Virus record (IMG/VR): IMGVR_UViG_3300026078_000017
Coordinates: 248,001 to 312,000 of that record
Length of the DNA stretch: 64,000 nucleotides
Strand: one strand, 5' to 3'
Shown here: positions 2,178 through 50,269 of the stretch, piece by piece
Layout of the letters: each line of letters begins with the position of its first letter
Numbering within the stretch: the first letter of the stretch is position 1
The notes under the pieces: model-generated
Seen by the model: only the letters and a program-made list of their open reading frames with translations
Database searches by the model: none
What the model was told of the DNA's origin: nothing
Program-made: the position numbers and the translations under genes

Positions 2178-2223
2178 TATCTCCTCAGTGAGTAAGAAGA
2201 GTATAACAAAAAACCCTCATGTG

Positions 2224-2457
2224 TCAAGGTGCTCTAGAAATCAACTTCCAATATTTCTGAGTTGATTCAACGATACCTAAGTCACGCTTTTCCATGGTTT
2301 CCAGGTCAAGGCCGACAAATTGGGTGTGAACGGGACTGACAGGAGTTACCGAAAGAACAAGCACAAAAAGCATGTCTCTTTCTAGAAAAGAAGATTCGTC
2401 TTCCTCGGAAAATCTTACCAGATCTCCGACTTTTATGCTGTCATGCCTAATCGTCAT
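2224..2457 (-). CDS. small SH3/KOW-like protein (GD family)
   Basis: IKVGDLVRF...VLVL...GLDL...WKLISR. Confidence 0.75.
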   Translation of the reverse strand: MTIRHDSIKVGDLVRFSEEDESSFLERDMLFVLVLSVTPVSPVHTQFVGLDLETMEKRDLGIVESTQKYWKLISRAP

Positions 2458-2677
2458 CTTCAATCCGAGCAACAAAGTGCCAACATTTTTCGGTTGACGT
2501 GATAATGCCACATTGGTCGTACTGCATGGTATCAAGATTCAGACCATCGAAATCTGTGTGACCTTCCTTGCGTGGAATCAGCTTCAAGATCAAGAAACAC
2601 TTGACATGGAAGTCACTTTCGGGCCTTGACTTGAAGGAAACAACATCCCCAACCCTAACTTCATTCCATTTAATCAC
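2447..2677 (-). CDS. small SH3/KOW-like protein (GD family)
   Basis: VRVGDVVSF...FLIL...GLNL...WHFVAR. Confidence 0.75.
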   Translation of the reverse strand: MIKWNEVRVGDVVSFKSRPESDFHVKCFLILKLIPRKEGHTDFDGLNLDTMQYDQCGIITSTEKCWHFVARIEDDD

Positions 2678-2683
2678 ATAAAC

Positions 2684-2746
2684 ACCTTAGCATATAAGCT
2701 TGTTCTTGTCAAAGGGTTTGACAAGACACAAAAACCGTGCTAAAGT
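2684..2746. promoter_or_regulatory. back-to-back divergent sigma70-type promoters
   Basis: Minus TTGACA(2712-2707)..TGCTAAGGT; plus TTGACA(2718-2723)-17bp-TAAAGT. Confidence 0.7.
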
Positions 2747-2756
2747 CTCAGGTGAT

Positions 2757-3035
2757 ATGAATCGACAAGATATTAAGGTAGGTGACTTACTTGAGTGGAC
2801 AGGTAAAATGATGAATGAGGTTGGCATCATTTTGGTCCTAGAGATTTACACTCAAGACTTTACGGTGGAAGATCCAAACCTTGGAATGAAACCAACCTTG
2901 ACGAAACATCGTTACATGCCTGAGAGAACAGTATTTCTTGGGTTGTCGCTCAAAGACAACGACAAGGAGGTTTATGCTCTCAATAAAGATACCGAATCTT
3001 TTTGGCGTCTTGTGGAGCGTGCTAAAACAACATAA
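2757..3035 (+). CDS. small SH3/KOW-like protein (GD family)
   Basis: IKVGDLLEW...ILVLE...GLSL...WRLVER. Confidence 0.75.
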   Translation: MNRQDIKVGDLLEWTGKMMNEVGIILVLEIYTQDFTVEDPNLGMKPTLTKHRYMPERTVFLGLSLKDNDKEVYALNKDTESFWRLVERAKTT

Positions 3036-3062
3036 GAGCCCACCGATTTCTCAGTAGGCTCT
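3035..3062. terminator. hairpin between convergent genes
   Basis: AGAGCC...GGCTCT inverted repeat. Confidence 0.45.
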
Positions 3063-3085
3063 CACTTGTGACTCACGGTTGAGAC

Positions 3086-3397
3086 TCAGGTTGCTTCGCC
3101 CTTGTACTCGCAATCCTGGAAGTATGCCAGAACCCAACCGTACTGTGCGTGCAAGCGCTGCTCTTCCGCCATCGAACGAACAGAAGCGTTTTGGGCATGA
3201 GCCATGCAGTGAACGATGTAGTACTGGTCGGTCTTCACGATCATGAGGTAGAGACAGTCCTCGAACATGTCGAAAAACTTGTCGTTTGCTGCCAACAGCT
3301 TCTCACGGGTGACGAGCGTGTTTGCAAGCTCAAGTGGCGCCTTCATGTCACCAACGTCGCTCGTCAAGTCGATAACCGAAACAGTGTTGTTGCTCAT
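3086..3397 (-). CDS. hypothetical protein
   Basis: GAGGAG RBS, own promoter 3421-3448, GC-rich codons. Confidence 0.75.
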   Translation of the reverse strand: MSNNTVSVIDLTSDVGDMKAPLELANTLVTREKLLAANDKFFDMFEDCLYLMIVKTDQYYIVHCMAHAQNASVRSMAEEQRLHAQYGWVLAYFQDCEYKGEAT

Positions 3398-3444
3398 ATC
3401 GCGATCTCCTCAGTGACTTTGTTTTAGCAGAATCCCAGGTTGGG

Positions 3445-3801
3445 TCAAGCGATTTTCTTAAGCCACTCAGTCAAAAGCTCAGGACGATCGCCCTTGATCC
3501 AGGGAGAAACTCCCTCAGGAATCTTCTCACGCGAGGAAAAGACCACCACTGGAAGTTCTTGCTCTTCCGCTTCCCAAAACACACGTTGACCCATGTTGTC
3601 TTCCGGCCATTGACTGTCAAGTCGGGCAGGAAACACCCAATCAGTAACCACAGCACAGAAGCCATGATCGGGTGCACGAAGGGCTTTAATGGCCTCATAA
3701 AGCGTGCCAACGTGTGTGACCTGAAGTCCCAGCGCTGCACACTCCTCCAAAACCATTTCCGCCTTGCTGAAAGTGTCCTCAACCAAAAGAATCTTTTTCA
3801 C
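3445..3801 (-). CDS. single-domain response regulator (CheY-like receiver)
   Basis: KILLVED acidic pocket, VVTDW phosphoacceptor Asp, PVVVFSS, IK. Confidence 0.85.
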   Translation of the reverse strand: MKKILLVEDTFSKAEMVLEECAALGLQVTHVGTLYEAIKALRAPDHGFCAVVTDWVFPARLDSQWPEDNMGQRVFWEAEEQELPVVVFSSREKIPEGVSPWIKGDRPELLTEWLKKIA

Positions 3802-5787: not shown

Positions 5788-6071
5788 GTCCAGATTATAT
5801 CAGTTTCCTCTGACCCGTCAAGTACTCGTTCACCATTTCTGATAAGATGAGCCTGAGGCTTTGCCTGGTTTTGTTCATCAAAGAACACACGTTGGATCTT
5901 TTGGGCTTGCAGAGAAAAGCCAAATATGTCAAGATAAAGATCTTCCTTGTTAAGGATATACGGTGCACCCAAATCCCCAAATCTCTCAGAGTTGATTTTG
6001 GTAATAATCCATGCTACCTTCTGGCGAGGGATTACAATCAAGTCACCAACCTGAACAGAACAAAGTTTCAC
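5781..6071 (-). CDS. small SH3/KOW-like protein (GD family)
   Basis: VQVGDLIV...LIRNGERV. Confidence 0.7.
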   Translation of the reverse strand: MKLCSVQVGDLIVIPRQKVAWIITKINSERFGDLGAPYILNKEDLYLDIFGFSLQAQKIQRVFFDEQNQAKPQAHLIRNGERVLDGSEETDIIWTC

Positions 6072-8655: not shown

Positions 8656-8727
8656 TGGGCCATCGGGGTAACGATCCCCGTTCGTCGGATTAAAAGTCCG
8701 ATGCTTCACCATTAAAGCTTATAGCCC
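8656..8727 (-). tRNA. tRNA-Lys (UUU)
   Basis: Full cloverleaf GGGCTAT/ATGGCCC; anticodon arm TCGGA-CTTTTAA-TCCGA; atypical T-loop ATCGTTA; no encoded CCA. Confidence 0.9.
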
Positions 8728-9065
8728 TAAATCACCAAAACACCAGCATGAATCTCACCGTGACAATTAGAGCATACCAAAACGCACTTGTCAAGCTCTT
8801 CTTTTACTCGTTTCCACGACAGAGCCCAATTGCCGCTTATTTGAAATTCCTTGGTTGAGGGATCGAGATGATGAAAATGTAATGACTGTTTACATTTACT
8901 ATACCCGCAAACAATACATGAATCACCTTTGTAAGCGAAGCACTGTCGTGCTCTTTCTTTACGCCTGGCGTTGACAAGACAGGTATTACACTGCGTTTTG
9001 GTATGGCCTGCTTTTTTACTATAGCTATATGTGCGAGTGCATTGTGAACATTGATTCATGTTCAC
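8727..9065 (-). CDS. HNH homing endonuclease
   Basis: CxxC pairs, LHFHHLDP..K...KCVLVCSNCHGEIH. Confidence 0.9.
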   Translation of the reverse strand: MNMNQCSQCTRTYSYSKKAGHTKTQCNTCLVNARRKERARQCFAYKGDSCIVCGYSKCKQSLHFHHLDPSTKEFQISGNWALSWKRVKEELDKCVLVCSNCHGEIHAGVLVI

Positions 9066-10566: not shown

Positions 10567-10603
10567 TATAATGCCTCAGAGGTGACTTCTGTATTCTTAC
10601 ACC

Positions 10604-10822
10604 CTACGACGTAAGCATGTCCGTCAAACGCTTCACAAGCTCTTGCGCTTCCGCAGGAGTGAGCGTAAGAACGTTTGCACGGGGCGCGTGCTCCATGAGA
10701 AGCGTGACGTCGATGGTGTCCGCACGGCGAGAAAAAACAACAGAGTCCTCGCCCATGTCGACTTCCGTGATTTCCGTCTTGCCCGTGTAGTCGTTGACAG
10801 TCGTTCGTACGTGAAAGCTCAT
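10604..10822 (-). CDS. hypothetical protein
   Basis: Own promoter, purine-rich leader, GC-rich codons. Confidence 0.75.
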   Translation of the reverse strand: MSFHVRTTVNDYTGKTEITEVDMGEDSVVFSRRADTIDVTLLMEHAPRANVLTLTPAEAQELVKRLTDMLTS

Positions 10823-10956
10823 ATCGTGGCTCTCTTTCTCAGTTACCTAATAATAGCACCTAACCTGAGGCATGCAAGTACTATTTTGACAAAAGAAAAT
10901 CGGGCACGGAAACCCAAAGGTCTCACATGTCCGATTGCGGCGCCTAGAAGGCTGTG

Positions 10957-11271
10957 TCAGTCATCGAAGTCGGAAAAGCTACCGTAGTCCTCGTCCGTTC
11001 CGAAACCGCAGGAAGCGAGCGCAGACTCCGCATCGCCATCCATGTCCTCACCGTAAAGGTAATCCTCGATTTCCCCTTCGGCCTCGATTTCCTCACGCTC
11101 ACGACGATTCTCTTCCTCATACGCCTCATCGAAGGCAATCTCGATGGACTGCTCGAAATGATGCGTCACGCTATTTGCGGTGGAATCCGCCTCACGCCAG
11201 GCATCGGCGTCAAGCTCAAGTGCCCGAAGATACGTGGAATGGCAGCACTGAATGGTGTGATTCTCGTTCAT
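10957..11271 (-). CDS. highly acidic hypothetical protein
   Basis: D/E-rich, C-terminal MDGDAESALASCGFGTDEDYG; own promoter. Confidence 0.8.
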   Translation of the reverse strand: MNENHTIQCCHSTYLRALELDADAWREADSTANSVTHHFEQSIEIAFDEAYEEENRREREEIEAEGEIEDYLYGEDMDGDAESALASCGFGTDEDYGSFSDFDD

Positions 11272-11359
11272 GGCATATTCTCCGTTGTTGAAGTGCCCTG
11301 CTGACAAAGAACATAATAGCAGAATGGGGTTGTCGTGCAACCCCTATTTTGCCAGATTT

Positions 11360-11599
11360 CTACCGAGCGAGTTTCTTGGCGAATGCCTTACGAGCACGCT
11401 TGTGGGCATCACGATCCGGCTTTGACATTCCGGCTTCCATACGATACCACTCGTGGACACTAAGACACTCGATCGGAACGATGATCTCGCCCCACAAGGG
11501 CGCACACAGTCCACAGTTGTCGATGTTCGGATTCGAGTGTGCCTCACCGGGACACTTGACCGCGTGATACCTGACAGCCTTCGTGGTCGACTTCGTCAT
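11360..11599 (-). CDS. hypothetical Cys/His-containing protein
   Basis: KCPGEAH...NCGLC; own promoter. Confidence 0.75.
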   Translation of the reverse strand: MTKSTTKAVRYHAVKCPGEAHSNPNIDNCGLCAPLWGEIIVPIECLSVHEWYRMEAGMSKPDRDAHKRARKAFAKKLAR

Positions 11600-11655
11600 G
11601 GCGTCCGTCCTTTGTTATGAGGATACTATAGCAAAATAGAAGACACGTGCAAGGA

Positions 11656-11880
11656 TTATTTTTCGGGAAACCACGCCTGAGTGTATCCGCCACAGTCATA
11701 CTCAAAGCTCGACACGCGCTTTCCTTCGTCGAAGCTTGCCAAGATCACACGATCGCCTGAATAAGTCGTCTGTGACAGTTTGCAAGCCTGTAGGTGTGCA
11801 GCTTGACGATCCGTGAAAACCGAAACCGTCGAAAGACCCTCGTAAGGAACATTGACTGCAACCATGTGTGCAAGTGCCAT
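11656..11880 (-). CDS. hypothetical protein
   Basis: Own promoter and RBS. Confidence 0.7.
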   Translation of the reverse strand: MALAHMVAVNVPYEGLSTVSVFTDRQAAHLQACKLSQTTYSGDRVILASFDEGKRVSSFEYDCGGYTQAWFPEK

Positions 11881-11938
11881 TTCGTCATCCGCCTTTCGAT
11901 AGATTCAATATAGCAAAAACCGAGAGTATGTGCAAGAA

Positions 11939-12100
11939 TTATTTTTCCTGCACCCGGAGTTTGTTTAGTGCGGCAAAAAACGCCACTAAGGACTCGGCAA
12001 TACACCGATTGATTGCCTTTGCGTCACCTGGACCAAAGGTGTATCCGCCAGCGGACAAAATCCGCTGTAACTTTCGGTAGTTATTTGGTCGTTTTGTCAC
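11939..12100 (-). CDS. hypothetical protein
   Basis: Hand-translated 53 aa GTG-start ORF after TGCTATTCT box. Confidence 0.45.
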   Translation of the reverse strand: MTKRPNNYRKLQRILSAGGYTFGPGDAKAINRCIAESLVAFFAALNKLRVQEK

Positions 12101-12112
12101 CTTTACAGAATA

Positions 12113-12146
12113 GCAAAACCCACTTGACTTTCAAGTGGGTTTTGCC
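12113..12146 (-). terminator. perfect hairpin terminator
   Basis: GCAAAACCCACTTGA..TCAAGTGGGTTTTGC. Confidence 0.6.
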
Positions 12147-12155
12147 AGAATGTTA

Positions 12156-12365
12156 TCAGTGGATTTCGATGCCCACACCGTAAGGCGTGAACGTTCCGCC
12201 ATCGGCGAGCTTGACGGGCCGAAGAGAAACCTGACCCGTGATCAGGTTCGTGATCTTCGCAGGAAACATGCCACGAAGGTCGGGCTTGTTGTCGAGGATC
12301 TTGACCTCACGGGTCCCACAAGCGAAAAAGAACGACCGACCAATGTTGAAATTGACGATGGACAT
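12156..12365 (-). CDS. hypothetical protein
   Basis: MSIVNFNIG start, own promoter. Confidence 0.7.
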   Translation of the reverse strand: MSIVNFNIGRSFFFACGTREVKILDNKPDLRGMFPAKITNLITGQVSLRPVKLADGGTFTPYGVGIEIH

Positions 12366-12415
12366 TTTCGACACCCTCACTTTCTGAATATAGTCTAGCA
12401 GGGTTTTGGTAAAGG

Positions 12416-12571
12416 TCAATGCAAAACGTTGGACAGAAGGGTAATCACACCCACGAACGCCAGCCAAGCAACCAAAACCCATCCAGCCGTCACGGTTGAG
12501 CCCGTGATCAAGAATGCAGCGAGGGTGAACAGAAACGCGAGAACGAAGGGGAGAGGATTCATGTTCTGCAT
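12416..12571 (-). CDS. small membrane protein
   Basis: Hand-translated 51 aa with two hydrophobic segments; stop lies within TTGACC. Confidence 0.55.
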   Translation of the reverse strand: MQNMNPLPFVLAFLFTLAAFLITGSTVTAGWVLVAWLAFVGVITLLSNVLH

Positions 12572-12595
12572 GATGATTTCTTTCTATGTTGGAGT

Positions 12596-12820
12596 CTAGC
12601 AGGATTCGGGTAAAAGTCGACCCAAATGCAGCAAAGGGTCAAAAAAACCTGAATCGGACATGAGTTGAAAGAAAAAGAACGACTGAGGCGTTTGGGTTCC
12701 AACAAATGTACTTGAACCACGACACCAAATTTCACCAACATATGAATTCCACGTCAGATATTCTTGCTCTGACAAGTCAAACTCATATGCCTCTGACACC
12801 TCAGGAAGTTCGATTCTCAT
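12596..12820 (-). CDS. hypothetical protein
   Basis: Follows promoter TTGCTT..TGCTAAGGT. Confidence 0.6.
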   Translation of the reverse strand: MRIELPEVSEAYEFDLSEQEYLTWNSYVGEIWCRGSSTFVGTQTPQSFFFFQLMSDSGFFDPLLHLGRLLPESC

Positions 12821-12858
12821 CGTAAGAAACCTTAGCACAGGTTTCATTGGAAGCAAGA

Positions 12859-13122
12859 TTACTTCTTCTCACCGTATTTCTTTTCGTAGTTTCGCACGTA
12901 TTCGGTCATGCTAGGACTGAGCAAGTCACAATCAGCCAGAAAGGTCAGACACCCTTCGTACTGTGTCAACTTGTCGCTGTCAAGCGTGCACTTGAATCGT
13001 GCATCCTCATGATTGCCACGGCGCAAGTGTGTCACAGCTTGCCTAAGCACTTCCGTGCCACGACCGTTGTTGACAGTACGATTGTAGGCTTCTACCTTAT
13101 CGGCCAGTTCATCGTTTGTCAT
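12859..13122 (-). CDS. hypothetical protein
   Basis: Follows promoter TTGCAT..TGGTAAGAT. Confidence 0.7.
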   Translation of the reverse strand: MTNDELADKVEAYNRTVNNGRGTEVLRQAVTHLRRGNHEDARFKCTLDSDKLTQYEGCLTFLADCDLLSPSMTEYVRNYEKKYGEKK

Positions 13123-13160
13123 GTGCTTATCTTACCAGGCTTTTGACAGAATGCAAGCCC

Positions 13161-13535
13161 TTACTTCTGAGATTCGTTGTAGGTTTGCCGAAGTAGGTGC
13201 TTTGCGTAATTTACACTACTCCGCAGAGAAGTTACCCACGTTGCACCGCATTTTCCTTCCATCTTGACTATGAATTCATGGTCATCCACGATATCACGAA
13301 GGAGTTGACGCATTGTGTCAAGCTCTTTCTTGAGCTTGACGATTTCGGTTTCTTCCTGTACGACTGGAGCGGTGTATTCCACTTCGGTCATCACGATCGA
13401 CAACCCTGCATCGGACGCCAGCGCCCAGAAACACCGTGCTTCATCCGAGAAAATCCACTGTTGAGCATCGGGCTCGATGAAAAACGAAGCGATCTCACGT
13501 CCAGTGGCAATGTCTTTGACAACGGCGATTTCCAT
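13161..13535 (-). CDS. hypothetical protein with coiled coil
   Basis: MEIAVVKD start, AAGGA RBS, own promoter. Confidence 0.7.
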   Translation of the reverse strand: MEIAVVKDIATGREIASFFIEPDAQQWIFSDEARCFWALASDAGLSIVMTEVEYTAPVVQEETEIVKLKKELDTMRQLLRDIVDDHEFIVKMEGKCGATWVTSLRSSVNYAKHLLRQTYNESQK

Positions 13536-13603
13536 TGTGTCCGTCCTTTGAATATAAAGAAAGCTTATCACGATTTTTCTGTCGTGCAAGCTTTCTTTTT
13601 GTA

Positions 13604-13694
13604 TGGTTGATTTCTGGAATCGAACCAGATCCGTTCCTGCGGTATGCCGGAACATGCTCCCTCTAGGACTTCCGCCCCTTACAACAAATCAACC
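13604..13694 (-). ncRNA. tRNA-like RNA with non-canonical D and anticodon arms
   Basis: Acceptor GGTTGATT/AATCAACC; perfect T-arm TCTGG-TTCGATT-CCAGA; GTTCC/GGAAC arm with 11-nt loop. Confidence 0.6.
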
Positions 13695-13711
13695 GTGACC
13701 CTAGGAACCTC

Positions 13712-13969
13712 TCAGAACGACTTTTCGATCGTCCAACCTGCCGACTTGAGGGTGATCTCGAAAGCCCGCAGAATCGAATTCTGGTGGCGCGTGGTGGTAC
13801 GCGAGCGCGTCTGACCAAAGAACCGAATCGACTTCTTGACACGATCGACGATCGCGATGTTCATGTCGTAGGAGTGAACGTGATCGCCCTTCATCGTCAG
13901 TGCGCCACTGACGCAACCAAGGCCAGTGTTGCAGAAATCGACGAATTCGGAGTCGCGATACTTTGCCAT
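13712..13969 (-). CDS. conserved phage hypothetical protein (SY...S-x-TT-x-H-Q type)
   Basis: HSYDMNIA...SRTTTRHQN; strong AAAGAAAGAGGATA leader. Confidence 0.75.
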   Translation of the reverse strand: MAKYRDSEFVDFCNTGLGCVSGALTMKGDHVHSYDMNIAIVDRVKKSIRFFGQTRSRTTTRHQNSILRAFEITLKSAGWTIEKSF

Positions 13970-14140
13970 TTCGATATCCTCTTTCTTTTCCGTGTCAGTC
14001 AGTGGATAGATATACTTTACCAGAAACCAAGTCAGAGTCAAGAACGATTTTGCTTTTTCTCGTGTTCCTGACGCATGGCAAGGATTTCCGACAGAGATCC
14101 GATTTTGTACTGAATCCCTGGGAAAATGCAAGAACCAAAT

Positions 14141-14335
14141 TCAGCGATTGACCATCGCATTGGCGAATTCCGTACCATCCATGCGGATCTCACGCTTGCA
14201 CGCGAGCCGTGAGACTCGACGCTTCATACGGGAATTCATGACCTTTGCCTGCTTGAGCGTGCCATGACGGCAGCACGAGCACTTGAAGCCACCAGGACCA
14301 CGATTGCACTTCTTGGCGGTGTCTCGGATATCCAT
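14141..14335 (-). CDS. small basic Cys-containing protein
   Basis: GPGGFKCSCC, K/R-rich; own promoter. Confidence 0.7.
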   Translation of the reverse strand: MDIRDTAKKCNRGPGGFKCSCCRHGTLKQAKVMNSRMKRRVSRLACKREIRMDGTEFANAMVNR

Positions 14336-14378
14336 GTTCTCAACCTCTGAATCTATATTAGCAGAATCAGGTAACCCG

Positions 14379-14576
14379 TCAACCGTTCTTTTTGGGATTC
14401 GGCAACCTGAGTACTTGCTTATAACCATCGCACGGACAGTGGGCACACGGACACTTTTCGTTGAAAGTGAAGTGATTACTACGTGGGTGCCCACACTCAC
14501 ACCCAACAATTCCAAGCATTTCCGCTTGTTCTTGGGTGAGATCGACTCGAATCTTTTTGCTCTTTTTCGTAGCCAT
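14379..14576 (-). CDS. small putative zinc-binding protein
   Basis: CECGH...H...CPCAHCPC. Confidence 0.7.
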   Translation of the reverse strand: MATKKSKKIRVDLTQEQAEMLGIVGCECGHPRSNHFTFNEKCPCAHCPCDGYKQVLRLPNPKKNG

Positions 14577-14578
14577 GG

Positions 14579-14974
14579 TCAATTCCCCACATGACCGCAA
14601 AAGGTCACGTCGTCATGGTTCGGTTGACACACAGCATAGCAGCGTCCAGCGGGGTCAAACTGACTCGAAAAGTCACAAACTCCATCGCTGGTGTCGCCAA
14701 AAAGACACGACTCGCACGCAACGAAGTGATTGATTTCGATATCTTCCATGCAGAAGTGTGCAGCATTGACCGGCGAAGCGTAGGTAAGACCCACACAAGC
14801 CTGCTCACACGTACGACCATTCGACGGATAACCGGCAATGTGGCAGTCGGTCTGCATGCGCTGACAGTCCGACACGCAAGCTTCCATGGCAGTCTCGTCC
14901 GTGTAGGTCATCGCCACCGGCGCGCTACAACCAACAACCGTCGCGAGCATCACGAGCGAAAATAGAGTCTTCAT
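14579..14974 (-). CDS. Cys-rich lipoprotein
   Basis: Signal peptide with VVG-C lipobox, many Cys; own promoter. Confidence 0.75.
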   Translation of the reverse strand: MKTLFSLVMLATVVGCSAPVAMTYTDETAMEACVSDCQRMQTDCHIAGYPSNGRTCEQACVGLTYASPVNAAHFCMEDIEINHFVACESCLFGDTSDGVCDFSSQFDPAGRCYAVCQPNHDDVTFCGHVGN

Positions 14975-15034
14975 ATTGGCATCACTCACTTTCTGAGTAT
15001 ATCTTAGCGGAAAATCTCGATCTGTCAAACTGAT

Positions 15035-15442
15035 TTATAGCCAGTCGTGACAATTGAGCGTTTGCGCCTGAGAGACAACACTTGGGCAATGTTCCAAGGC
15101 ATATGCCTGTAGTGCACTGTCGATTTGCGACACTGAGGCATCCTCGCACGAATTGTAGGACGAGAAGAAGCCTTCCACACACAGAATTTCGTCTTGTGAC
15201 AAGTCGACACACCCTGGAATTGCCGCATTGGCTACCGCAGTATCGTGACACTTCGTGCGATCTGCCTCGGTCGTCTCGTAACCGGGCATGGTGCAAGCAA
15301 ACACAACGTCAAGCATGTTGACGCAATCGGTCGTCAGAAGCGTGTCAGGCGCCAGCAATGGCGTACTACCAGGCGCACTTGCGCAACCGCTCGCCATCGC
15401 CACACCAACCGTCAGAAGAAATGCCATCGTGATTTTCGTCAT
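15035..15442 (-). CDS. Cys-rich lipoprotein
   Basis: Signal peptide with ASG-C lipobox, regularly spaced Cys; own promoter. Confidence 0.75.
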   Translation of the reverse strand: MTKITMAFLLTVGVAMASGCASAPGSTPLLAPDTLLTTDCVNMLDVVFACTMPGYETTEADRTKCHDTAVANAAIPGCVDLSQDEILCVEGFFSSYNSCEDASVSQIDSALQAYALEHCPSVVSQAQTLNCHDWL

Positions 15443-15495
15443 GTCGCTAACCTCAGAAGACAATATAGCAGGGTGAAGGGATCGTGCAAGGGATT

Positions 15496-15639
15496 TTAGG
15501 TAGAAAGCTTCTCTTTGTACTTTTCCAGGGCTTGCAGGAATGCCGACCCGTATCCATGACGAGCGCAAGCGCTCGAAAAGTCTCGCCCCTGGATTTCGTT
15601 GGTTGTGCCATCGAACCAAAACAGGATGAAAGTGCGCAT
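15496..15639 (-). CDS. hypothetical protein
   Basis: MRTFILFWFDG, own promoter. Confidence 0.65.
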   Translation of the reverse strand: MRTFILFWFDGTTNEIQGRDFSSACARHGYGSAFLQALEKYKEKLST

Positions 15640-15662
15640 GGTGTCGTTTCTCCCTTTGGAAT

Positions 15663-15968
15663 AACTAGCAGGAAAATACTTGCGTGCAACCTGCAATATG
15701 GCTTGCGGGGTTTTAGGTTTCTGCTATTATGATCTTACTCCAGAAGGAGGGGAGAATGAGGGATGGGAATTTTCAGGTTGGCACGGTTAGTGCTATCGCA
15801 ATCCCTAGACCATCGTACCAAACTCACTTGGCATAAAACTTTCCCAAAAAGATTTCTTGCTTCTGACGTCAAGCCTGCTAAAGTGTTGATTGTTGAAGGC
15901 GAGACGAAAGAGACGAGAAAAGAGACTCAAAAAAATCTCTTGACGAAGTTTCCGAGTCTGCTAAAGTA
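15663..15968. promoter_or_regulatory. divergence point with clustered promoters
   Basis: One leftward and at least three rightward TTG..TGCTA promoters in an ORF-poor interval. Confidence 0.6.
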
Positions 15969-16005
15969 ACCAAGTCCCAAACGAGAAAAGAAAGAGGATA
16001 TCAAT

Positions 16006-16571: not shown

Positions 16572-16603
16572 GGGAAGGGCGGTTTATGTCGCCCTTCCTT
16601 TTT
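16572..16603 (+). terminator. intrinsic terminator
   Basis: GGAAGGGCG...CGCCCTTCC-TTTTT. Confidence 0.75.
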
Positions 16604-17298: not shown

Positions 17299-17730
17299 AT
17301 GAACATGAATGACTATACCTGGTTCGCTCAGATTCTGGTCGATGCGGATTACACGCCCCGCAAGTATTCTGGTCGTTTCATGTATGGAAAGCAGTGTCTT
17401 TCCATTCACCTCGATCGCGAGGATTCTCAGGCCCGGACCATCGGTCTGATTCTTGCGAACATGTCGATGGACAACAAGCATCCGGCACGGTTCAAGCAGG
17501 ATGTGCTTGATCTTTCGGAGATCTTGCAGGATGCTCGTGAGGATTCCATGGGCCTTGGAAGCGTCCTGTACTTCCCCAAGGTCACGTGGAAGGATTCCTA
17601 CGAGAATCCCACGGGCGAGGAAGAGGATTTCGACGAGGAAGACGAACAGAAGGAATGGGAAGACGAGCGTACCACGAACGCTCTTGAGTTGACCTGTTCC
17701 GATTCTGAGGAGATTTCTCCTAAGGGTTGA
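17299..17730 (+). CDS. conserved phage protein (YSGRxMYGxxC...DSMG motif)
   Basis: YSGRFMYGKQC, DSMGLGSVLYFP; acidic tail; own promoter. Confidence 0.8.
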   Translation: MNMNDYTWFAQILVDADYTPRKYSGRFMYGKQCLSIHLDREDSQARTIGLILANMSMDNKHPARFKQDVLDLSEILQDAREDSMGLGSVLYFPKVTWKDSYENPTGEEEDFDEEDEQKEWEDERTTNALELTCSDSEEISPKG

Positions 17731-17814
17731 CACCGGGGGTAGCTCCTGCTACCATTTCCTCTGTCCGTTTTGACATGTTTTTGAACATGTTTTGATGGAC
17801 GGAGGAAAACTGCT

Positions 17815-24190: not shown

Positions 24191-24219
24191 AACTTACTGT
24201 AGCAAGACTTTTGGAAGTG

Positions 24220-24543
24220 TCAAGCTGTTTCCTGCTCGGTCTGCTTGAGCCAGAGACACGAGTTTGCGTCCACACCCTTGACGATGAACGTCACGTGATC
24301 GACGGAGCACTCACGCGGATACATGGTCACATCCGTAGGCTGGATGTTGAAGTGTGCGGCAACAACCGGAATCAGACGACTCACCACCTTGCGATAGGCC
24401 GTAGACTGACCAATATTTGCCATCTCCGCGTACTGGTCGCCCGTAAGAGCCACACGAACACGACCATTCTTGCGCGGTCGACCCTTCATGCCGGTCTGCG
24501 AGGGAAGCGAAGTGGTCTGCTCAAGAGAAAGAAGCGTCGTCAT
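24220..24543 (-). CDS. hypothetical protein with AT-hook-like motif
   Basis: KGRPRK; GC-rich codons; own promoter. Confidence 0.75.
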   Translation of the reverse strand: MTTLLSLEQTTSLPSQTGMKGRPRKNGRVRVALTGDQYAEMANIGQSTAYRKVVSRLIPVVAAHFNIQPTDVTMYPRECSVDHVTFIVKGVDANSCLWLKQTEQETA

Positions 24544-25789: not shown

Positions 25790-25821
25790 ATGAAGTTGTT
25801 TTAGCTCATTCCTTGGACTTG

Positions 25822-26190
25822 TCAACCACCAACGACAACACATGGAAGCTCGCGAACGCTTTCTCGATGCAGGTAAAACCGGCAATAACGTACCGGAAAC
25901 TTCTGCCTGTAGTTCTTGTGCGACGAGAACGTTTCCACTTCTACCATGAACTTCTCGTCTTGCCAGTTGATGTTCTTCGTGATAACACGATGCGTACCAT
26001 AACCATGACCGCAAAGAATATCACCCGCTTCAGCCATACGCCAGGGCGTATATTCGCGCTTCTCGGGACTACGAGTTTGGTCGAGATATCGACTAGGTCC
26101 CGGTCGGACATGCAGCGTTCCCGTCTGCATGTCCATATTCGCCGAGAAGATACTGTGTCCCATTTGAATCTTGAACGTTTGAGGAGTCAT
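25822..26190 (-). CDS. hypothetical protein
   Basis: GC-rich codons; TGCTAAAAC box upstream. Confidence 0.7.
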   Translation of the reverse strand: MTPQTFKIQMGHSIFSANMDMQTGTLHVRPGPSRYLDQTRSPEKREYTPWRMAEAGDILCGHGYGTHRVITKNINWQDEKFMVEVETFSSHKNYRQKFPVRYCRFYLHRESVRELPCVVVGG

Positions 26191-28878: not shown

Positions 28879-29016
28879 GCAAAAAAAGAGCTGTCAAACA
28901 CGTTGACGCTCTTAGTAAAATGTGGCACACTATAGTTAAATGTATGTTGTGGTATGGTTGGGTAGCTTTAGGATATTTGACCTTGGTCTTTGTCAGCTAC
29001 TCTTGGTTGATTCTCA

Positions 29017-31206: not shown

Positions 31207-31450
31207 ACGTACCTCCTACCACCTTCTACGTCAGGAGTCAATCATTTTCTGCAAAGGCAAAAAACACCACAAGCTGAATCAAAGCCCAATGGCACAAAAA
31301 ACTAACAAGAGTGAGAGGGTAGGGTACCAGGAACCCAATAAAGACCGTAATTAATACCGTTAGTTGCAGAAACGTTTCCAGGGGGAGTCCAATAACTTTC
31401 ATGAGATAAGTCTAGCACATTCTTTGATGGAGTGCTAGACTTATCTTGTA

Positions 31451-34750: not shown

Positions 34751-35016
34751 TCTATTGCAGCGAAACTGAGAAGTTTGTCAGTCAATTTCCTCTTGTTGAA
34801 ACTTCAAAGGTTGAGGTTGGTGATATTGTCACTTATCACAATGACGCCTTCAAAGACAGCATGTTCCTGATCCTCAAAATCTTCAAGGGACAAAAGGACC
34901 GTTTCACTTTCCATGCGATGGAAGTTCGATGGGGAAAGTCAGGTAAGCTTAATGTTTTCCTGGAACTTGATCCAGAAGCTCGGGGATTTCGACTGGTACA
35001 AAAAGCTGGTAGTTGA
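34747..35016 (+). CDS. small SH3/KOW-like protein (GD family)
   Basis: VEVGDIV...MFLIL. Confidence 0.75.
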   Translation: MIYCSETEKFVSQFPLVETSKVEVGDIVTYHNDAFKDSMFLILKIFKGQKDRFTFHAMEVRWGKSGKLNVFLELDPEARGFRLVQKAGS

Positions 35017-35049
35017 CACCTCCAAGACACATGCTAAGACTAGTGAACA

Positions 35050-37196: not shown

Positions 37197-37448
37197 ATGC
37201 TTGATCCCAATTATTACCTTGACGCAAGAGTTGGGGACATTTGGGACATTGAAGGCACAGCTTGGCGCATTGTAGTCTTGGTAATAGAACCACTTGACTC
37301 AGAAGGTCGTGCCATGTGTCTCAAGTTGAGATTTTGGAATGATGGGAACGATGAAACTCATCGTGGTCCTAGAATATCTGCCACTGCATTTGTTCATGGC
37401 CGTAAAAGATCGACCTTGATCGCAAGGATTGACGACGAAAATCCTTGA
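37197..37448 (+). CDS. small SH3/KOW-like protein (GD family)
   Basis: ARVGDIW...VLVIEP...LIAR. Confidence 0.75.
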   Translation: MLDPNYYLDARVGDIWDIEGTAWRIVVLVIEPLDSEGRAMCLKLRFWNDGNDETHRGPRISATAFVHGRKRSTLIARIDDENP

Positions 37449-37478
37449 CCAAAATCGAGAGTCTGCTAAGACCTAGTC

Positions 37479-37850
37479 ATGCGAAACAACACGACTCAGG
37501 TTATGTGGATCAACCCGCGAGCAAGCCTTACCATCGTCGCCAAGGAAAGCCGTCAGCTTGGTCGGTGCTATCATGGCACGACCTATGAGGTTTCCAGCAC
37601 CAAGGAAATTTCTCCTGCGACTCTTTACCAGCTTTTTCTCCTGGGCTTTTTCGGAGCCGGTCAGGAATTCAAGGTGGTCAGCTCGGAAGAGCACAAGGAT
37701 TCGATTGCCCCGTGTGTGGTTGACCTGACAACGAACAAGATGATCGAAGGTGCAGTTGCCACGAATCAGTATTCCGGCAAGCCCTACGAGCCCATGAACA
37801 TGTCCTATTGGGTTTATCAGGTAGAGCGTCGAACCGACAGTGGTGACTGA
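37479..37850 (+). CDS. hypothetical protein
   Basis: Own promoter, GC-rich codons. Confidence 0.75.
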   Translation: MRNNTTQVMWINPRASLTIVAKESRQLGRCYHGTTYEVSSTKEISPATLYQLFLLGFFGAGQEFKVVSSEEHKDSIAPCVVDLTTNKMIEGAVATNQYSGKPYEPMNMSYWVYQVERRTDSGD

Positions 37851-39553: not shown

Positions 39554-39590
39554 TCCTTGACGCCATCTTGAAATCTGGTAAGATACTCCT

Positions 39591-39893
39591 ATGCAAACGC
39601 TCAAGCTTGAAGAGAAGGTCATCAACGTGGTCGACTACAACGATCTCGATGATTTCATCAGTTTTCACTACGGAGTCCCTTTCGAGGTTGTTGCCGACCA
39701 GGAAATGAACAACTATTCTTCCAAGCTGATCAAGGTCGAGAAGGAAAACCTTGATCAGTGGCAACAGGAAGATTTGAATTACCTCAAGGAATCGGGGGAC
39801 TATAAGGGTGGGTCACTTCGTACACTTTTGGCAGATCTGTGCAACCGTGGACACCTCGCACCCGGAAACTACCTGATTCAGGTGTTCTGGTGA
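39591..39893 (+). CDS. conserved phage hypothetical protein
   Basis: LLADLCNRGHLAPGNYLIQVFW; own promoter. Confidence 0.8.
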   Translation: MQTLKLEEKVINVVDYNDLDDFISFHYGVPFEVVADQEMNNYSSKLIKVEKENLDQWQQEDLNYLKESGDYKGGSLRTLLADLCNRGHLAPGNYLIQVFW

Positions 39894-40177: not shown

Positions 40178-40415
40178 GGTAGAGATTGGGGACTTGTGGT
40201 CTTGGAAAATGGCGCCACTCAACGACAAAACAGATAACATCTTTCTTATTTTGAACGCAGAAATCGAAACACTTAAAGTAGATGGCGTTACACACGAACA
40301 AATAGTTTTCGAGGCATTTTGTTTTGAATACCACAAACGACGAAGGTTTCTGTTTCGAAACGATGCTAGATTTTACACTCTCATTTCAAGGTTAGACAAT
40401 GGTAAAGACGGTTAA
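40155..40415 (+). CDS. small SH3/KOW-like protein (NGLEVExGDLWS subfamily)
   Basis: KNGLEVEIGDLWS...YTLISR. Confidence 0.75.
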   Translation: MKAKNGLEVEIGDLWSWKMAPLNDKTDNIFLILNAEIETLKVDGVTHEQIVFEAFCFEYHKRRRFLFRNDARFYTLISRLDNGKDG

Positions 40416-40614
40416 TGGACTTGAGGTTGAACTTGGTGACCTTTGGTCATTTAGAACCGTAGACGAAGAAGACAAGTTGATTATGATTATCAGACTTGCC
40501 AAACTTCCAGGTGGAGATTCATCATTTCAGGTTCTCGACATGTCAACCAATGAAATCAAGAACTTTGGTTTTGCTCTGTTGCCTTGGAGATATGCCCTTA
40601 TTTCGAGAACTTGA
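40399..40614 (+). CDS. small SH3/KOW-like protein (NGLEVExGDLWS subfamily)
   Basis: VNGLEVELGDLWS...YALISR. Confidence 0.75.
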   Translation: MVKTVNGLEVELGDLWSFRTVDEEDKLIMIIRLAKLPGGDSSFQVLDMSTNEIKNFGFALLPWRYALISRT

Positions 40615-40650
40615 CATCTGATTTTAAGTGCGCTAACCTCTGGGTTCCCT

Positions 40651-47831: not shown

Positions 47832-48203
47832 ATGCCTCTTTTCTATAGAAACAGTTTAACTCAGTTGAGTCTGCCATTTCCTGAGTCGGAACGTGTGTTG
47901 ATTAAAGGCTACAACCAAGCATTTTTATTTGACCTGGTTGAGTCAGACACGTGGATTGCAACCAAGACCGTTTTATTTCTAACAGAAACCACTGATTCTG
48001 ATGGTTCGCCTTATGGTCCAGAAGTGGTTGTTCTTCAAGAAACTTGGACACAAGGTGCATTCTATGTGAATGGCAAAATCCAAGCATATACTACCACTGT
48101 CAATGAAGCCATAAGAAAATACATGATTGGCGTTTTTTCCTATGAGCGAAATCAGCACGGATGGCTGTGGGCTGGTGACTTTAAGGCAAAGTTAGAACAA
48201 TGA
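47832..48203 (+). CDS. hypothetical protein
   Basis: TGCTAAAGT box upstream. Confidence 0.65.
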   Translation: MPLFYRNSLTQLSLPFPESERVLIKGYNQAFLFDLVESDTWIATKTVLFLTETTDSDGSPYGPEVVVLQETWTQGAFYVNGKIQAYTTTVNEAIRKYMIGVFSYERNQHGWLWAGDFKAKLEQ

Positions 48204-48478
48204 CTGACATATGGAGCGACAATCCACCTTTGGCAAAGGTTATGCCAGCAGGCACCTTAATCATGCGAACAGGTGAATATGGCAAAGATATCTCATCGAC
48301 ATTTGCATTTATTGCCTTACAGCGTTTTGTTACGCCATCTTGTCGTGAGTATAATCAAGAGAAACCTGGGTTTCTCACTGGTGTGTGGGCTTGTGTCTAC
48401 GACATAGAACAACAACGTGTGCGAGACATTATGATCGATTTTTCGACTTCTTGGAAATATACTTTCCAAGAACCGTAG
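48200..48478 (+). CDS. small SH3-like protein (GD family)
   Basis: PAGTLIM...VYDI. Confidence 0.65.
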   Translation: MTDIWSDNPPLAKVMPAGTLIMRTGEYGKDISSTFAFIALQRFVTPSCREYNQEKPGFLTGVWACVYDIEQQRVRDIMIDFSTSWKYTFQEP

Positions 48479-48516
48479 ACCCTTGCATTCATGTGAAAAG
48501 GTGCTAAAACACCACT

Positions 48517-48714
48517 ATGACCACATCACAGAAGTCGCTAGAGGATGACATTCAGATTCTTGGTGGACTTGCAGAAGTTCACATGACTGCCACGACCAAG
48601 GAAGACTTTCAGCTTTGTCAGCGTGTTCGGGCCACGATCACGTGCTACATGCTGAATCGTCCAGGCTGGATCAAGATTGAATCTGGCTTGAACCTTTCCA
48701 CGTCCATGACGTGA
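48517..48714 (+). CDS. hypothetical protein
   Basis: Own promoter TTGCAT..TGCTAAAAC. Confidence 0.65.
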   Translation: MTTSQKSLEDDIQILGGLAEVHMTATTKEDFQLCQRVRATITCYMLNRPGWIKIESGLNLSTSMT

Positions 48715-48998
48715 CAATGGAAAACAAATTTCCATTTGAGGTTGGAGATCTCATTGGCTTCAAGCCAAACATGCAGCCAGGAAAAATGGTGCCAGATTGG
48801 CTTGGACTGGTTTTGACAGCAACAAAACCATATCGCTCATCCTTAGACGACATGGAGGATGAGGATGGCATGTTAGTACGATATAAGATTTTCTGTTTTC
48901 AAACAGAAAACGTGACCTCCTGGTACCATTATGAAGATGACATGCCTCGTTGGTACTTGGTTGCCTCACCCATCGAAAATCTTGTGAGACATGACTGA
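48711..48998 (+). CDS. small SH3/KOW-like protein (PFxVGD subfamily)
   Basis: PFEVGDLI...LGLVL. Confidence 0.75.
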   Translation: MTMENKFPFEVGDLIGFKPNMQPGKMVPDWLGLVLTATKPYRSSLDDMEDEDGMLVRYKIFCFQTENVTSWYHYEDDMPRWYLVASPIENLVRHD

Positions 48999-49206
48999 AC
49001 GAACAAAACCTTTTGGTGTTGGTGACATTGTTGGCAACATGTGGATTGAACCACCAGAGTTGGTCTTGGTTGTTGAGGTTAGAGTTGCTAAGTCATTTTT
49101 TGAGTATGACGTGATTTACCTAGACAAGAAACAGGGTGGACATTCGACTTGGGCAGAACTTTCTGACTTTGATCCCATGTTTAAGCTTTTTTATGAGGCA
49201 GATTAA
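48991..49206 (+). CDS. small SH3/KOW-like protein (PFxVGD subfamily)
   Basis: RTKPFGVGDIV. Confidence 0.75.
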   Translation: MTERTKPFGVGDIVGNMWIEPPELVLVVEVRVAKSFFEYDVIYLDKKQGGHSTWAELSDFDPMFKLFYEAD

Positions 49207-49461
49207 ATGTTAAAGCCTCGTACAAAGCCCTTTAAGGCAGGAGACGTTATCGAGTGGAGGTGGGAACAGAGTTGGTCCCGAGTTTTGGTCCTTGATGTAA
49301 CCTATGAGAAACAAGTAGCTAATCCTATATGGGTTTATTCTGTTTTGCATCTCAGCGACTCAAATCCACATTGTATTTATTTGCAGACCAAGTCTATTTG
49401 GCATGAAAATGAATTTCCGTTTGCGCAAAACATCAACCTGGTGTATAGTGTTGAAGAATGA
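49207..49461 (+). CDS. small SH3/KOW-like protein (PFxVGD subfamily)
   Basis: RTKPFKAGDVI. Confidence 0.75.
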   Translation: MLKPRTKPFKAGDVIEWRWEQSWSRVLVLDVTYEKQVANPIWVYSVLHLSDSNPHCIYLQTKSIWHENEFPFAQNINLVYSVEE

Positions 49462-49709
49462 TAAGAAGGCATCCATTTAAGGTTGGCGACCTAGTCAAGT
49501 TCAAGGTTGACAATGACGACTTCATTACAGCCCTTGTTGTCGACGTGAACGTCAGAAGTACCAAAAATATGGGCTTTCACTATTTCTACGATATTGTCCA
49601 CATTGGTGGAAGCACTCATGGAAGCAAGGGCATTTGGAATGAGTGTCCAGGTTTTGGAATAACGTTTTCAAATGACTTTATCCTGGTGTCATCATGCAAG
49701 ACAACTTGA
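49458..49709 (+). CDS. small SH3/KOW-like protein (PFxVGD subfamily)
   Basis: PFKVGDLV. Confidence 0.75.
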   Translation: MIRRHPFKVGDLVKFKVDNDDFITALVVDVNVRSTKNMGFHYFYDIVHIGGSTHGSKGIWNECPGFGITFSNDFILVSSCKTT

Positions 49710-49948
49710 AGTTTGTGCCATTCAAGGTTGGTGACATTGTCGAGCGTGACCTAGAAGGTGCTCCGAAGCGACTAGGATTAATTTTAGATATTTGGCCTTT
49801 TAGAACCAACACCACTGAAAGACAGTGTTTGCTTTACAAAGTGTGTCTTTTGGATGTGGCTATGTGGCGAATAGTCTCTTGGCAACATGAAAATTTGCCA
49901 AGATGGCCAAATATTCACTACAGGCTTATTTGTGGAACTGACACATGA
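49694..49948 (+). CDS. small SH3/KOW-like protein (PFxVGD subfamily)
   Basis: PFKVGDIVER...GLILD. Confidence 0.75.
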   Translation: MQDNLKFVPFKVGDIVERDLEGAPKRLGLILDIWPFRTNTTERQCLLYKVCLLDVAMWRIVSWQHENLPRWPNIHYRLICGTDT

Positions 49949-50187
49949 GAAAGACTTTCGAGATTGGTGATGTGGTCGAACGAACCTTTCGAGGCAATGT
50001 TCGTACCACATACACTGGTTTGATTTTGGATGTGACAAACACCAAAACAAACAAGTTATATACGGTTTTTGTTTTTGGTGCTAATCAGAAAGTCACCTGG
50101 ATCCACGACTTGATGTATCGTGATACAACAGTCACCTACAAACTCTGTTCTGAGGATTCCGAAAAAGAAGACAAAGAAACCGTTTGA
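49945..50187 (+). CDS. small SH3/KOW-like protein (PFxVGD subfamily)
   Basis: FEIGDVVER...GLILD. Confidence 0.75.
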   Translation: MRKTFEIGDVVERTFRGNVRTTYTGLILDVTNTKTNKLYTVFVFGANQKVTWIHDLMYRDTTVTYKLCSEDSEKEDKETV

Positions 50188-50269
50188 CAAGTTCCTGAAT
50201 GGTGCTAAAACAAAATGGTGATGAGGAGGTGACAATCAAGTCGCCCTCAAACAAATAGAGAAAAAGACA

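What the first reader, a model, noticed from the sequence alone, without database searches (positions are those of the whole stretch)
2222..50189. Stop codons fused to the -35 box of the next promoter (T-TGA-C)
Seen: the TGA stop of the upstream gene is the TGA within TTGAC at 2224, 3445, 12416, 17730, 24220, 25822, 35016, 37448, 40614 and 50187, each followed by a properly spaced -10 box. Inference: either extreme compaction, or promoter-headed cassettes join at the -35 element, which then supplies the stop for whatever gene lands upstream. This would be a shuffling mechanism reminiscent of promoter-mediated module exchange reported in T4-type phages.
Basis: partly seen in the sequence, partly recalled or inferred. 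Interest (0 to 1): 0.6.

Follow-up and report, generated by a model that had tools for sequence, protein, structure and literature searches.

The report
Stop codons inside phage promoter boxes
In the tightly packed early-gene region of a new 320-kb T4-like soil phage, many small genes end on the TGA inside the TTGACA box of the next promoter, which is mostly what tight packing and reading-frame chance predict, not a special joining mechanism.

Summary
All ten sites are real. At each, the TGA of a TTGAC ends an open frame, and an extended -10 (TGCTAnnnT) follows at the right distance. Nine are strong matches to a promoter motif with 96 copies in the genome (2-7 in shuffles). Two upstream ORFs (12416, 25822) are weak genes.

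The count is about what chance gives. Among genes still open at the -35, the frames split 9:8:7 (p=0.41) or 11:6:7 (p=0.14). T-TGA-C occurs at 25 of 247 TGA stops against 19 expected. Adding a related phage, R, gives 18-20 of 37 (p=0.04-0.008), so at most a modest excess.

The real signal is packing: stops cluster from -25 to +17 around the -35. About 38% of promoters are followed by an ATG 4-9 nt after the -10, the layout expected for leaderless mRNAs.

The cassette idea is partly supported. Between the window phage and R, 21 of 49 gene adjacencies are broken, and one promoter core sits before unrelated genes in both. But:
- breakpoints are not enriched at promoters (57% vs 57%);
- homology edges range from the -35 to the ATG;
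- the fused state flips at unrearranged junctions;
- C-termini shift by only 0-3 codons.

PeSL hallmarks (stem-loop, AT-rich flank, ~100-bp conservation) are absent.

The parts
2200..2227 (-). Promoter P2227 (TTGACA-N16-TATACT with TG). Its TGA (2226-2224) is the stop of ORF 2224-2535.
   Evidence: PWM 11.7, but 11/12 to the generic consensus. The homologue of the ORF in R ends at the same residue position in a different context.
3421..3448 (-). Promoter P3448. Its TGA (3447-3445) is the stop of ORF 3445-3801, and an SD-led gene 3086-3397 follows.
   Evidence: PWM 23.4, coding score 22. The R homologue is 2 residues longer.
12392..12419 (-). Promoter P12419. Its TGA is the stop of the small ORF 12416-12571 (gene I), and gene J 12156-12365 follows.
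   Evidence: The core is 24/25 identical to R promoter 9344, which stands before an unrelated gene. Homology to R's J promoter starts right after the -35.
17727..17755 (+). Promoter P17727. Its TGA (17728-17730) is the stop of gene 17305-17730 (141 aa, phrog_14658).
   Evidence: The promoter is conserved in R, but there the homologue stops at a TAA 6 nt before the -35.
24196..24223 (-). Promoter P24223. Its TGA is the stop of gene 24220-24543.
   Evidence: The neighbours are the same in R, but there the homologue stops at a TAA 8 nt before the -35.
25798..25825 (-). Promoter P25825. Its TGA closes ORF 25822-26190, which is a doubtful gene.
   Evidence: weak coding score, no homologue. Promoter plus about 200 nt downstream are conserved in R.
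35013..35040 (+). Promoter P35013. Its TGA (35014-35016) is the stop of gene 34747-35016, and the next ATG is at 35050, 9 nt after the -10.
37445..37472 (+). Promoter P37445. Its TGA is the stop of gene 37197-37448, and the next ATG is at 37479, 6 nt after the -10, so the intergenic space is the promoter alone.
40611..40639 (+). Promoter P40611. Its TGA is the stop of gene 40399-40614.
   Evidence: PWM 17.8, coding score 14.
50184..50211 (+). Promoter P50184. Its TGA is the stop of gene 49945-50187.
   Evidence: PWM 20.3.
14355..14382 (-). The TGA of P14382 ends gene C (14379-14600), and gene D follows.
31237..31241 (-). A further fused site. This TTGAC ends ORF 31238-31402, and the junction is fused in R as well (R 33323).
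10600..15700 (-). An array of 50-135-aa genes, most with their own promoter in a 35-60-nt spacer. Gene order here is scrambled relative to phage R.

Best explanation
The window is the early-type, hyperplastic small-gene region of a complete, circularly permuted 320-kb T4-like jumbo phage from a rhizosphere metagenome. Most of its ~100-aa genes carry their own host-type promoter (C-TTGACA, 14-15 nt, TGCTAnAnT). The genome is packed so tightly that each promoter abuts or overlaps the 3' end of the gene before it.

TTGACA holds a TGA in one frame, and TGA is this phage's commonest stop (54%). So any upstream gene that runs into the box in that frame ends there. Genes in the other two frames end a few codons later, in the spacer. 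The fused stop is therefore a by-product of packing plus frame, and it comes and goes in place through point changes and small indels in the last few codons.

Shown:
- the motif;
- the packing;
- the frame counts;
- the flipping between relatives.

Inferred:
- that the motifs are active early promoters;
- that selection for compactness positions them.
For: Identity of the phage:
- gp23-like capsid, T4-type DNA polymerase and RnlA-like ligase;
- 130-bp identical ends;
- a rhizosphere source.

Motif:
- spacing peak at N15/16;
- 96 sites against 2-7 in shuffles;
- information content confined to the two boxes.

Packing:
- upstream stops fall at -25 to +17 around the -35;
- promoter-bearing spacers are 30-60 nt;
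- 30 of 80 promoters have an ATG 4-9 nt after the -10, replicated as 15 of 38 in R.

Chance level:
- frames 9:8:7 (p=0.41) or 11:6:7 (p=0.14);
- T-TGA-C at 25 of 247 TGA stops against 19.2 expected;
- TGA is 247 of 457 stops.

Origin in place, at junctions whose neighbours are the same in R:
- 17730 is fused in the window, while R has a TAA at -6;
- 24220 is fused in the window, while R has a TAA at -8;
- the window stop at 26953 lies at -5, while R is fused;
- 31241 is fused in both.

Protein ends differ by only 0-3 residues between fused and unfused homologues.
Against: In the relative R the frame split is 9:4:0 (p=0.009). Pooled counts are 18-20 of 37 (p=0.038-0.0075). A real 1.5-fold preference for the fused frame therefore cannot be excluded.

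Gene calls are home-made (a self-trained Markov model), and the coding model was trained on the window genome, not on R.

No RNA data exist to show that the promoters fire.

Four of seven fused junctions in the window do lie at synteny breaks.
Confidence: 0.72

Rival explanations
1. Units of promoter plus gene move between loci and phages by recombination at the promoter, joining at or next to the -35. The invariant TGA of the -35 then closes whatever ORF lies upstream.
For: - 21 of 49 adjacencies of shared genes are broken between the window phage and R, mostly by moves of single genes.
- The core TTGACCTTTACCAAAACCyTGCTAG is 24/25 identical before unrelated genes at window 12419 and R 9344. 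In both places the upstream ORF ends in its TGA.
- Homology of the J cassette to R begins right after the -35, while the upstream genes differ.
- Promoter/UTR modules are shared by unrelated genes: window gene A with R gene D', and E with the 183-aa gene.
- There is a modest pooled excess of the TGA frame.
Against: - Promoters sit at 12 of 21 broken and 16 of 28 conserved junctions (odds ratio 1.0).
- The 5' homology edges of moved genes lie at the -35 (J, g4, L), near the -10 (D, M, N), at the SD (E) or at the ATG (O).
- The fused state flips at unrearranged junctions.
- C-termini are kept to within 0-3 codons, so no foreign tails are capped.
- Promoters within the genome share only 11-12 conserved bases in two blocks, and no repeats longer than 30 nt join them.
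- There are few paralogues.
Confidence: 0.15
2. Promoter birth is seeded by the stop codon. A TGA stop already supplies three of the six bases of TTGACA, so new promoters evolve most easily exactly on TGA stops. That would give a true excess of the fused frame.
For: - TGA is the commonest stop (54%).
- There is a pooled excess of the fused frame (18-20 of 37).
- The fused -35 sits at the natural protein end. In g3, for example, the end is at the same position in both phages although the contexts differ.
Against: - No excess appears in the window genome alone.
- T-TGA-C is barely enriched among TGA stops (25 vs 19.2).
- At 17730 and 24220 the promoter is conserved in R while the stop is a separate TAA upstream. 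There the promoter does not depend on the stop.
Confidence: 0.1
3. The result is an ORF-calling artefact. The open frames that end in TTGAC are not genes, and the pattern comes from reading any frame up to its first stop.
For: - 50 of 321 TTGAC in the window close some open frame of 50 codons or more, most of them non-coding.
- The ORFs at 12416 and 25822 have weak coding scores.
- P25825 is followed by a conserved non-coding stretch.
Against: - In eight of the ten upstream ORFs the fused frame is the best of six by coding score.
- Six of them (2224, 3445, 12416, 17730, 24220, and also 14382) have protein homologues in R at 34-62% identity.
Confidence: 0.03

Closest known systems
PeSLs (promoter-early stem-loops) of T4-type phages RB49/phi1, T4/PST, KVP40/nt-1 (Arbiol et al. 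2010, PMC2839356; Comeau et al. 2014, PMC4122927)
   Same: - Host sigma-70-type early promoters stand in front of small ORFan genes in hyperplastic regions of a T4-like phage.
- Single-gene units are gained, lost and moved between relatives.
- Some promoter or UTR modules are shared by unrelated genes.
- Crossover zones reported for PeSLs (upstream of the -35, between the -10 and the SD or ATG) resemble the homology edges seen here.
   Different: - There is no stem-loop excess at the promoters: 13.5% vs 12% of segments at MFE <= -8, with equal z-scores.
- There is no AT-rich block upstream (57% AT against 56% for the genome).
- Conservation is confined to about 12 bases, not about 100 bp.
- In PeSLs the upstream stop lies in the AT-rich stretch before the -35. 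Here it often lies in or after the -35.
- Breakpoints are not enriched at promoters.
T4 early promoters and early transcription units (review PMC2988021)
   Same: Many closely spaced host-polymerase promoters, each serving one or a few small early genes, with an extended -10 contributing to strength. This comparison rests on my own knowledge of T4. I listed the review in a search but did not read it.
   Different: - As far as I recall, T4's early -35 region does not carry TGA in the same way, so I did not test T4 for the same fusion.
- The high share of ATGs 6 nt after the -10 seen here is not, to my knowledge, described for T4.
Overlapping signals in compact phage and bacterial genomes (ATGA or TGATG stop/start overlaps, promoters inside the preceding gene)
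   Same: One stretch of DNA serves two functions because the intergenic space has been squeezed out. Which overlap occurs depends on the frame.
   Different: Here the shared triplet is a stop codon and the core of a -35 box. The arrangement recurs at roughly a quarter to a third of promoter-bearing same-strand junctions.
Morons of lambdoid phages (a gene with its own promoter and terminator inserted between older genes)
   Same: Autonomous promoter-plus-gene units lie between other genes.
   Different: Most junctions here have no terminator (27 terminator-like sites against 19.4 in shuffles over 20 kb). The units are packed head to tail with no spare DNA.

Membership tests
Sigma-70-type promoter with extended -10 | A TTGACA-like -35 box, a 16-18-nt spacer and a TAnnnT -10 box preceded by TGn | tested here: met
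   The position matrix shows C-TTGACA and TGCTAnAnT, with the spacing sharply peaked. The independent generic scan finds 45 sites against 21.5 in shuffles over 20 kb.
Sigma-70-type promoter with extended -10 | Transcription starts 5-9 nt after the -10 | not testable with these tools
   No RNA run holds this phage. The ATG peak 6 nt after the -10 is indirect support.
PeSL (promoter-early stem-loop) | A stem-loop within or overlapping the promoter that acts as terminator or attenuator | tested here: not met
   Folding energy of promoter segments equals that of random genome segments. A few individual cases do exist: the J-to-K junction with compensatory changes, and the sites at 16572-16599 and 25600-25583.
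PeSL (promoter-early stem-loop) | [quoted passage not shown] | tested here: not met
   AT content is 55-57% in the 60 nt upstream, which equals the genome average. Stops often lie in or after the -35.
PeSL (promoter-early stem-loop) | Sequence conservation spread over about 100 bp, enough for homologous recombination | tested here: not met
   Information content is near zero outside the two boxes. Self-BLAST finds no promoter repeats. Only a few promoter pairs share 25-40 nt.
PeSL (promoter-early stem-loop) | Indels and replacements between close relatives are bounded by the elements | tested here: inconclusive
   The only relative with a comparable region (R) is 30-83% identical in protein, so edges are blurred. 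Promoters are equally frequent at broken and conserved junctions. Some edges do lie at the -35.
PeSL (promoter-early stem-loop) | Mini-circles excised by recombination between flanking elements | not testable with these tools
   Only assembled contigs of the source sample are available, and they show no joints.
T4-like (Straboviridae-like) jumbo phage | A gp23-type major capsid protein, a T4-type DNA polymerase and other core genes | tested here: met
   Matches to phrog_138 (major head protein), phrog_405 (DNA polymerase) and the RnlA-like phrog_562. The capsid protein is 45% identical to that of Flavobacterium phage immuto and to uncultured huge phages.

The most novel reading that the evidence does not exclude
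In this lineage the 25-40-nt promoter core (-35 to -10) is itself a portable linker. Recombination on either side of it swaps genes and promoters between loci and between phages. The invariant TGA of the -35 acts as a built-in cap that keeps the upstream ORF closed after such joins. Together with leaderless starts at the transcription start site, this would allow gene units to be exchanged with no non-coding DNA except the promoter.
Probability: 0.15. Interest if true: 0.55.

Novelty: new member of a known kind. Interest (0 to 1): 0.3.

Why it matters
As stated, the finding is ordinary. A stop codon that coincides with the TGA of a -35 box is what tight packing gives in one frame out of three, and it needs no new mechanism.

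What is worth keeping is the setting:
- This is a previously undescribed T4-like jumbo phage lineage from soil.
- Its early region has roughly one host-type promoter per 100-aa gene.
- About 38% of those promoters are followed by an ATG where a leaderless mRNA would start.
- Gene order turns over very quickly against its only known relative.

That makes it a good natural system for asking how hyperplastic regions of large phages are rebuilt, and whether promoters serve as recombination linkers outside the enterobacterial T4 group.

Tried and rejected
Searches for relatives that gave little:
- Megablast of 42 kb of the window against GenBank phages found no match.
- IMG/VR searches with two small window proteins found nothing.
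- IMG/VR hits with RnlA (<=47% identity) and with the 231-aa protein (<=58%) lack the promoter motif.
- The closest capsid relative (92% identity, a 53.6-kb contig) overlaps only genome 139-150 kb, at 67-75% DNA identity with few promoters. That is too diverged to place breakpoints.
- L143, L144 and L147 looked like close variants of R with indels. They are 100% identical to R, and the differences were only in gene calling.
- The genome search could not reach R's record, so I extended R with two more exact-protein look-ups.

Sequencing runs:
- Only the source sample holds the phage, and only as contigs. It shows no variants, no joints and no RNA.

Other ideas checked and dropped:
- TGA or TAG recoding. 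A tRNA with a CTA anticodon exists, but in-frame coding extensions after TAG (3 of 35) are no more frequent than after TGA or TAA.
- Cassette duplication within the genome. There are few paralogues and no promoter-flanked repeats.
- PHROGs searches of the ten upstream ORFs. Only one has a family.
Full report
**What the window is**

The 64-kb window is bases 248001-312000 of a single 320,479-bp contig with 44% GC. The two ends of the contig repeat 130 bp, so the genome is complete and circularly permuted. It encodes:
- a gp23-type major capsid protein;
- a T4-type DNA polymerase;
- an RnlA-like ligase and a GroEL;
- 37 tRNAs and a tmRNA.

The capsid protein is only about 45% identical to any named phage. 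The DNA comes from a rhizosphere metagenome. The window is the part of the genome with about 100-aa genes, some 25 per 10 kb. That is the early-type, hyperplastic region of a T4-like jumbo phage.

At each of the ten coordinates the sequence is TTGAC, and its TGA closes an open frame of 55-156 codons. An extended -10 of the form TGCTAnnnT follows 15-16 nt later.

The motif is real, not a reading artefact:
- TTGAC-N15/16-GCTA occurs 51 times in the genome, against 1-4 times at other spacings.
- A matrix built from these sites finds 96 at >=14 bits, against 2-7 in shuffled sequence.
- A generic sigma-70 scan gives 45 sites against 21.5 expected in the first 20 kb.

Nine of the ten sites score 17.8-23.4 bits. 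Site 2224 scores 11.7 but is an 11/12 match to the generic consensus.

In eight of the ten upstream ORFs the fused frame is the best of six by coding score. The ORFs at 12416 (51-55 codons) and 25822 are weak.

**Is it more than chance?**

The right null is not a random position. Any ORF that reaches the -35 in the TGA frame must end there. So the question is whether that frame is over-represented among genes that run into the box.

| Sample | Method | Frames (TGA : other : other) | p vs one third |
|---|---|---|---|
| Window genome | no gene calls (best-coding ORF ending within 60 nt) | 9:8:7 | 0.41 |
| Window genome | self-trained gene set | 11:6:7 | 0.14 |
| Relative R, 40 kb | no gene calls | 9:4:0 | 0.009 |
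| Pooled | either method | 18-20 of 37 | 0.038-0.0075 |

Two further counts fit chance. Among 247 TGA stops, 25 lie in T-TGA-C against 19.2 expected from independent flanks, and 11 of the 25 are promoters. TGA is the commonest stop, at 54%.

My reading is that the window genome is at chance. Across both phages there may be an excess of up to 1.5-fold, and it is sensitive to the gene calls.

**What is truly non-random is the packing**

Upstream stops cluster between -25 and +17 of the first T of the -35. Genes in the other two frames end within five codons, inside the spacer. Promoter-bearing spacers are 30-60 nt.

Of 80 strong promoters, 30 are followed by the ATG of an ORF of 40 codons or more that starts 4-9 nt after the -10. 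In 18 of the 80 promoters an ATG lies at exactly 6 nt. R shows the same pattern, 15 of 38. This is the layout expected for leaderless mRNAs. Where both features meet (35016 to 35050, 37448 to 37479), the whole intergenic space is the promoter.

**Testing the cassette idea within the genome**

- Promoters share nothing beyond the two boxes. Information content is near zero elsewhere, and the upstream 60 nt are not AT-rich.
- Hairpins are no more frequent than in random genome segments.
- Self-BLAST finds no repeats that link promoters.
- Paralogues are few.

The defining features of PeSLs (PMC2839356, PMC4122927) are therefore not met.

**Testing the cassette idea between phages**

A search with the 141-aa protein, followed by exact-protein look-ups, recovered 40 kb of one relative. 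R is an 82-kb contig from another study. It has the same promoter motif (38 sites at >=14 bits) and 50 shared genes at 30-83% identity.

Gene order is strongly scrambled. Of 49 adjacencies, 21 are broken, mostly by moves, swaps or inversion of single genes. So modular shuffling is real here.

It is not tied to the -35, for four reasons:
- **Breakpoints.** Promoters sit at 12 of 21 broken junctions and 16 of 28 conserved ones (odds ratio 1.0).
- **Homology edges.** For moved genes the 5' edge lies at the -35 (J, g4, L), near the -10 (D, M, N), at the Shine-Dalgarno (E) or at the ATG (O). At this divergence, edges may also reflect loss of unconstrained spacer sequence.
- **Unrearranged junctions.** At the four junctions whose neighbours are the same in both phages, the state is as follows:

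| Junction | Window | R |
|---|---|---|
| 17730 | fused | TAA at -6 |
| 24220 | fused | TAA at -8 |
| 26953 | own stop at -5 | fused |
| 31241 | fused | fused |

  Fusion thus arises and decays in place.
- **Protein ends.** The ends of fused and unfused homologues differ by only 0-3 residues, so the box sits on the natural end of the protein.

**What does speak for promoter-linked exchange**

- The core TTGACCTTTACCAAAACCyTGCTAG is 24/25 identical before unrelated genes at window 12419 and R 9344, and both have a fused stop. Orthologous genes, by contrast, can carry different promoters.
- The window J promoter is a mosaic. Its -35 end matches R 9344. Its spacer and -10 match both R promoters. 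Its UTR and gene match R's J promoter.
- Promoter/UTR modules are shared by unrelated genes: window gene A with R gene D', and E with the 183-aa gene.
- Spacer pairs with at least 9 of 13 matches number 28 against 4.6 in shuffles. Part of that excess is positional base preference.

**Verdict**

The 'compaction' reading is right. The 'join at the -35' reading is not needed to explain the fused stops and fails its own refutation test on breakpoints. A looser version remains open: promoter modules as occasional recombination linkers in a fast-shuffling region, PeSL-like in effect but not in anatomy.

**Limits**

- Gene calls are my own.
- There is only one informative relative, and it is distant.
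- There are no RNA or population data.
- Promoters are so dense that the breakpoint test has little power.

Noticed in passing
whole genome and window, e.g. 37445-37481, 39557-39593, 5794-5821 (-), 26923-26950 (-): About 38% of strong promoters (30 of 80; 15 of 38 in relative R) have the ATG of a real-length ORF 4-9 nt after the -10, with a sharp mode at 6 nt. That is the layout expected for leaderless mRNAs, which I have not seen described for a T4-like phage.
   Followed up: partly
window 25583-25827 (-): Promoter P25825 is followed not by a gene but by a stretch of about 200 nt that is 75% identical in phage R. It ends in a strong intrinsic terminator (25600-25583) whose T-run abuts the -35 of the next promoter. 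This is a candidate small RNA, and no Rfam family matches it above threshold.
   Followed up: partly
window 13605-13694 (-): A tRNA-like element with a 9-bp acceptor stem, a long variable region and a canonical T-arm (CTGG-TTCGATT-CCAG). It gives a sub-threshold tRNA-Sec-like hit (22.5 bits) and is not called by ARAGORN.
   Followed up: partly
genome 139981-140057 (outside the window; locus L007:19981-L008:57): A tRNA with a CTA anticodon (amber suppressor type) lies among the 37 phage tRNAs, and there is a tmRNA at 165669-166047. TAG is only 8% of stops, but I found no sign that TAG is read through in genes.
   Followed up: partly
window 12100-12158 (-) and R 15449-15508 (-): The J-to-K spacer holds a hairpin that covers the -35 and is followed by a T-run leading into the -10. 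The stem differs between the two phages but stays paired (CCCACTTGA/TCAAGTGGG vs CCCGC/GCGGG). It is one of the few PeSL-like terminator-promoter composites here.
   Followed up: no
window 2705-2725, 12117-12141, 28890-28910; genome 6227-6245, 246780-246795: Divergent promoter pairs whose -35 boxes are back to back or overlap as a palindrome (GTCAAnnnTTGAC).
   Followed up: no
window 8656-9065 (-): A tRNA-Lys(UUU) gene next to an HNH endonuclease ORF (8727-9065). The ORF has paralogues at genome 159888, 164078 and 137541. A conserved HNH coding stretch gives two false promoter hits (window 8794 and genome 164139). This block is absent from phage R.
   Followed up: partly
genome 56565-56604, 87637-87668, 130665-130705, 178343-178380 (outside the window): A 30-40-nt repeat at 90-100% identity in four places in the late and structural part of the genome. 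Its function is unknown.
   Followed up: no
window 15940-16005 (+) and R 17901-17966 (+): The 5' UTR of the 183-aa gene is almost identical in the two phages (89% over 80 nt), more conserved than most proteins. Its last 24 nt also stand before the unrelated gene E (window 13969).
   Followed up: partly
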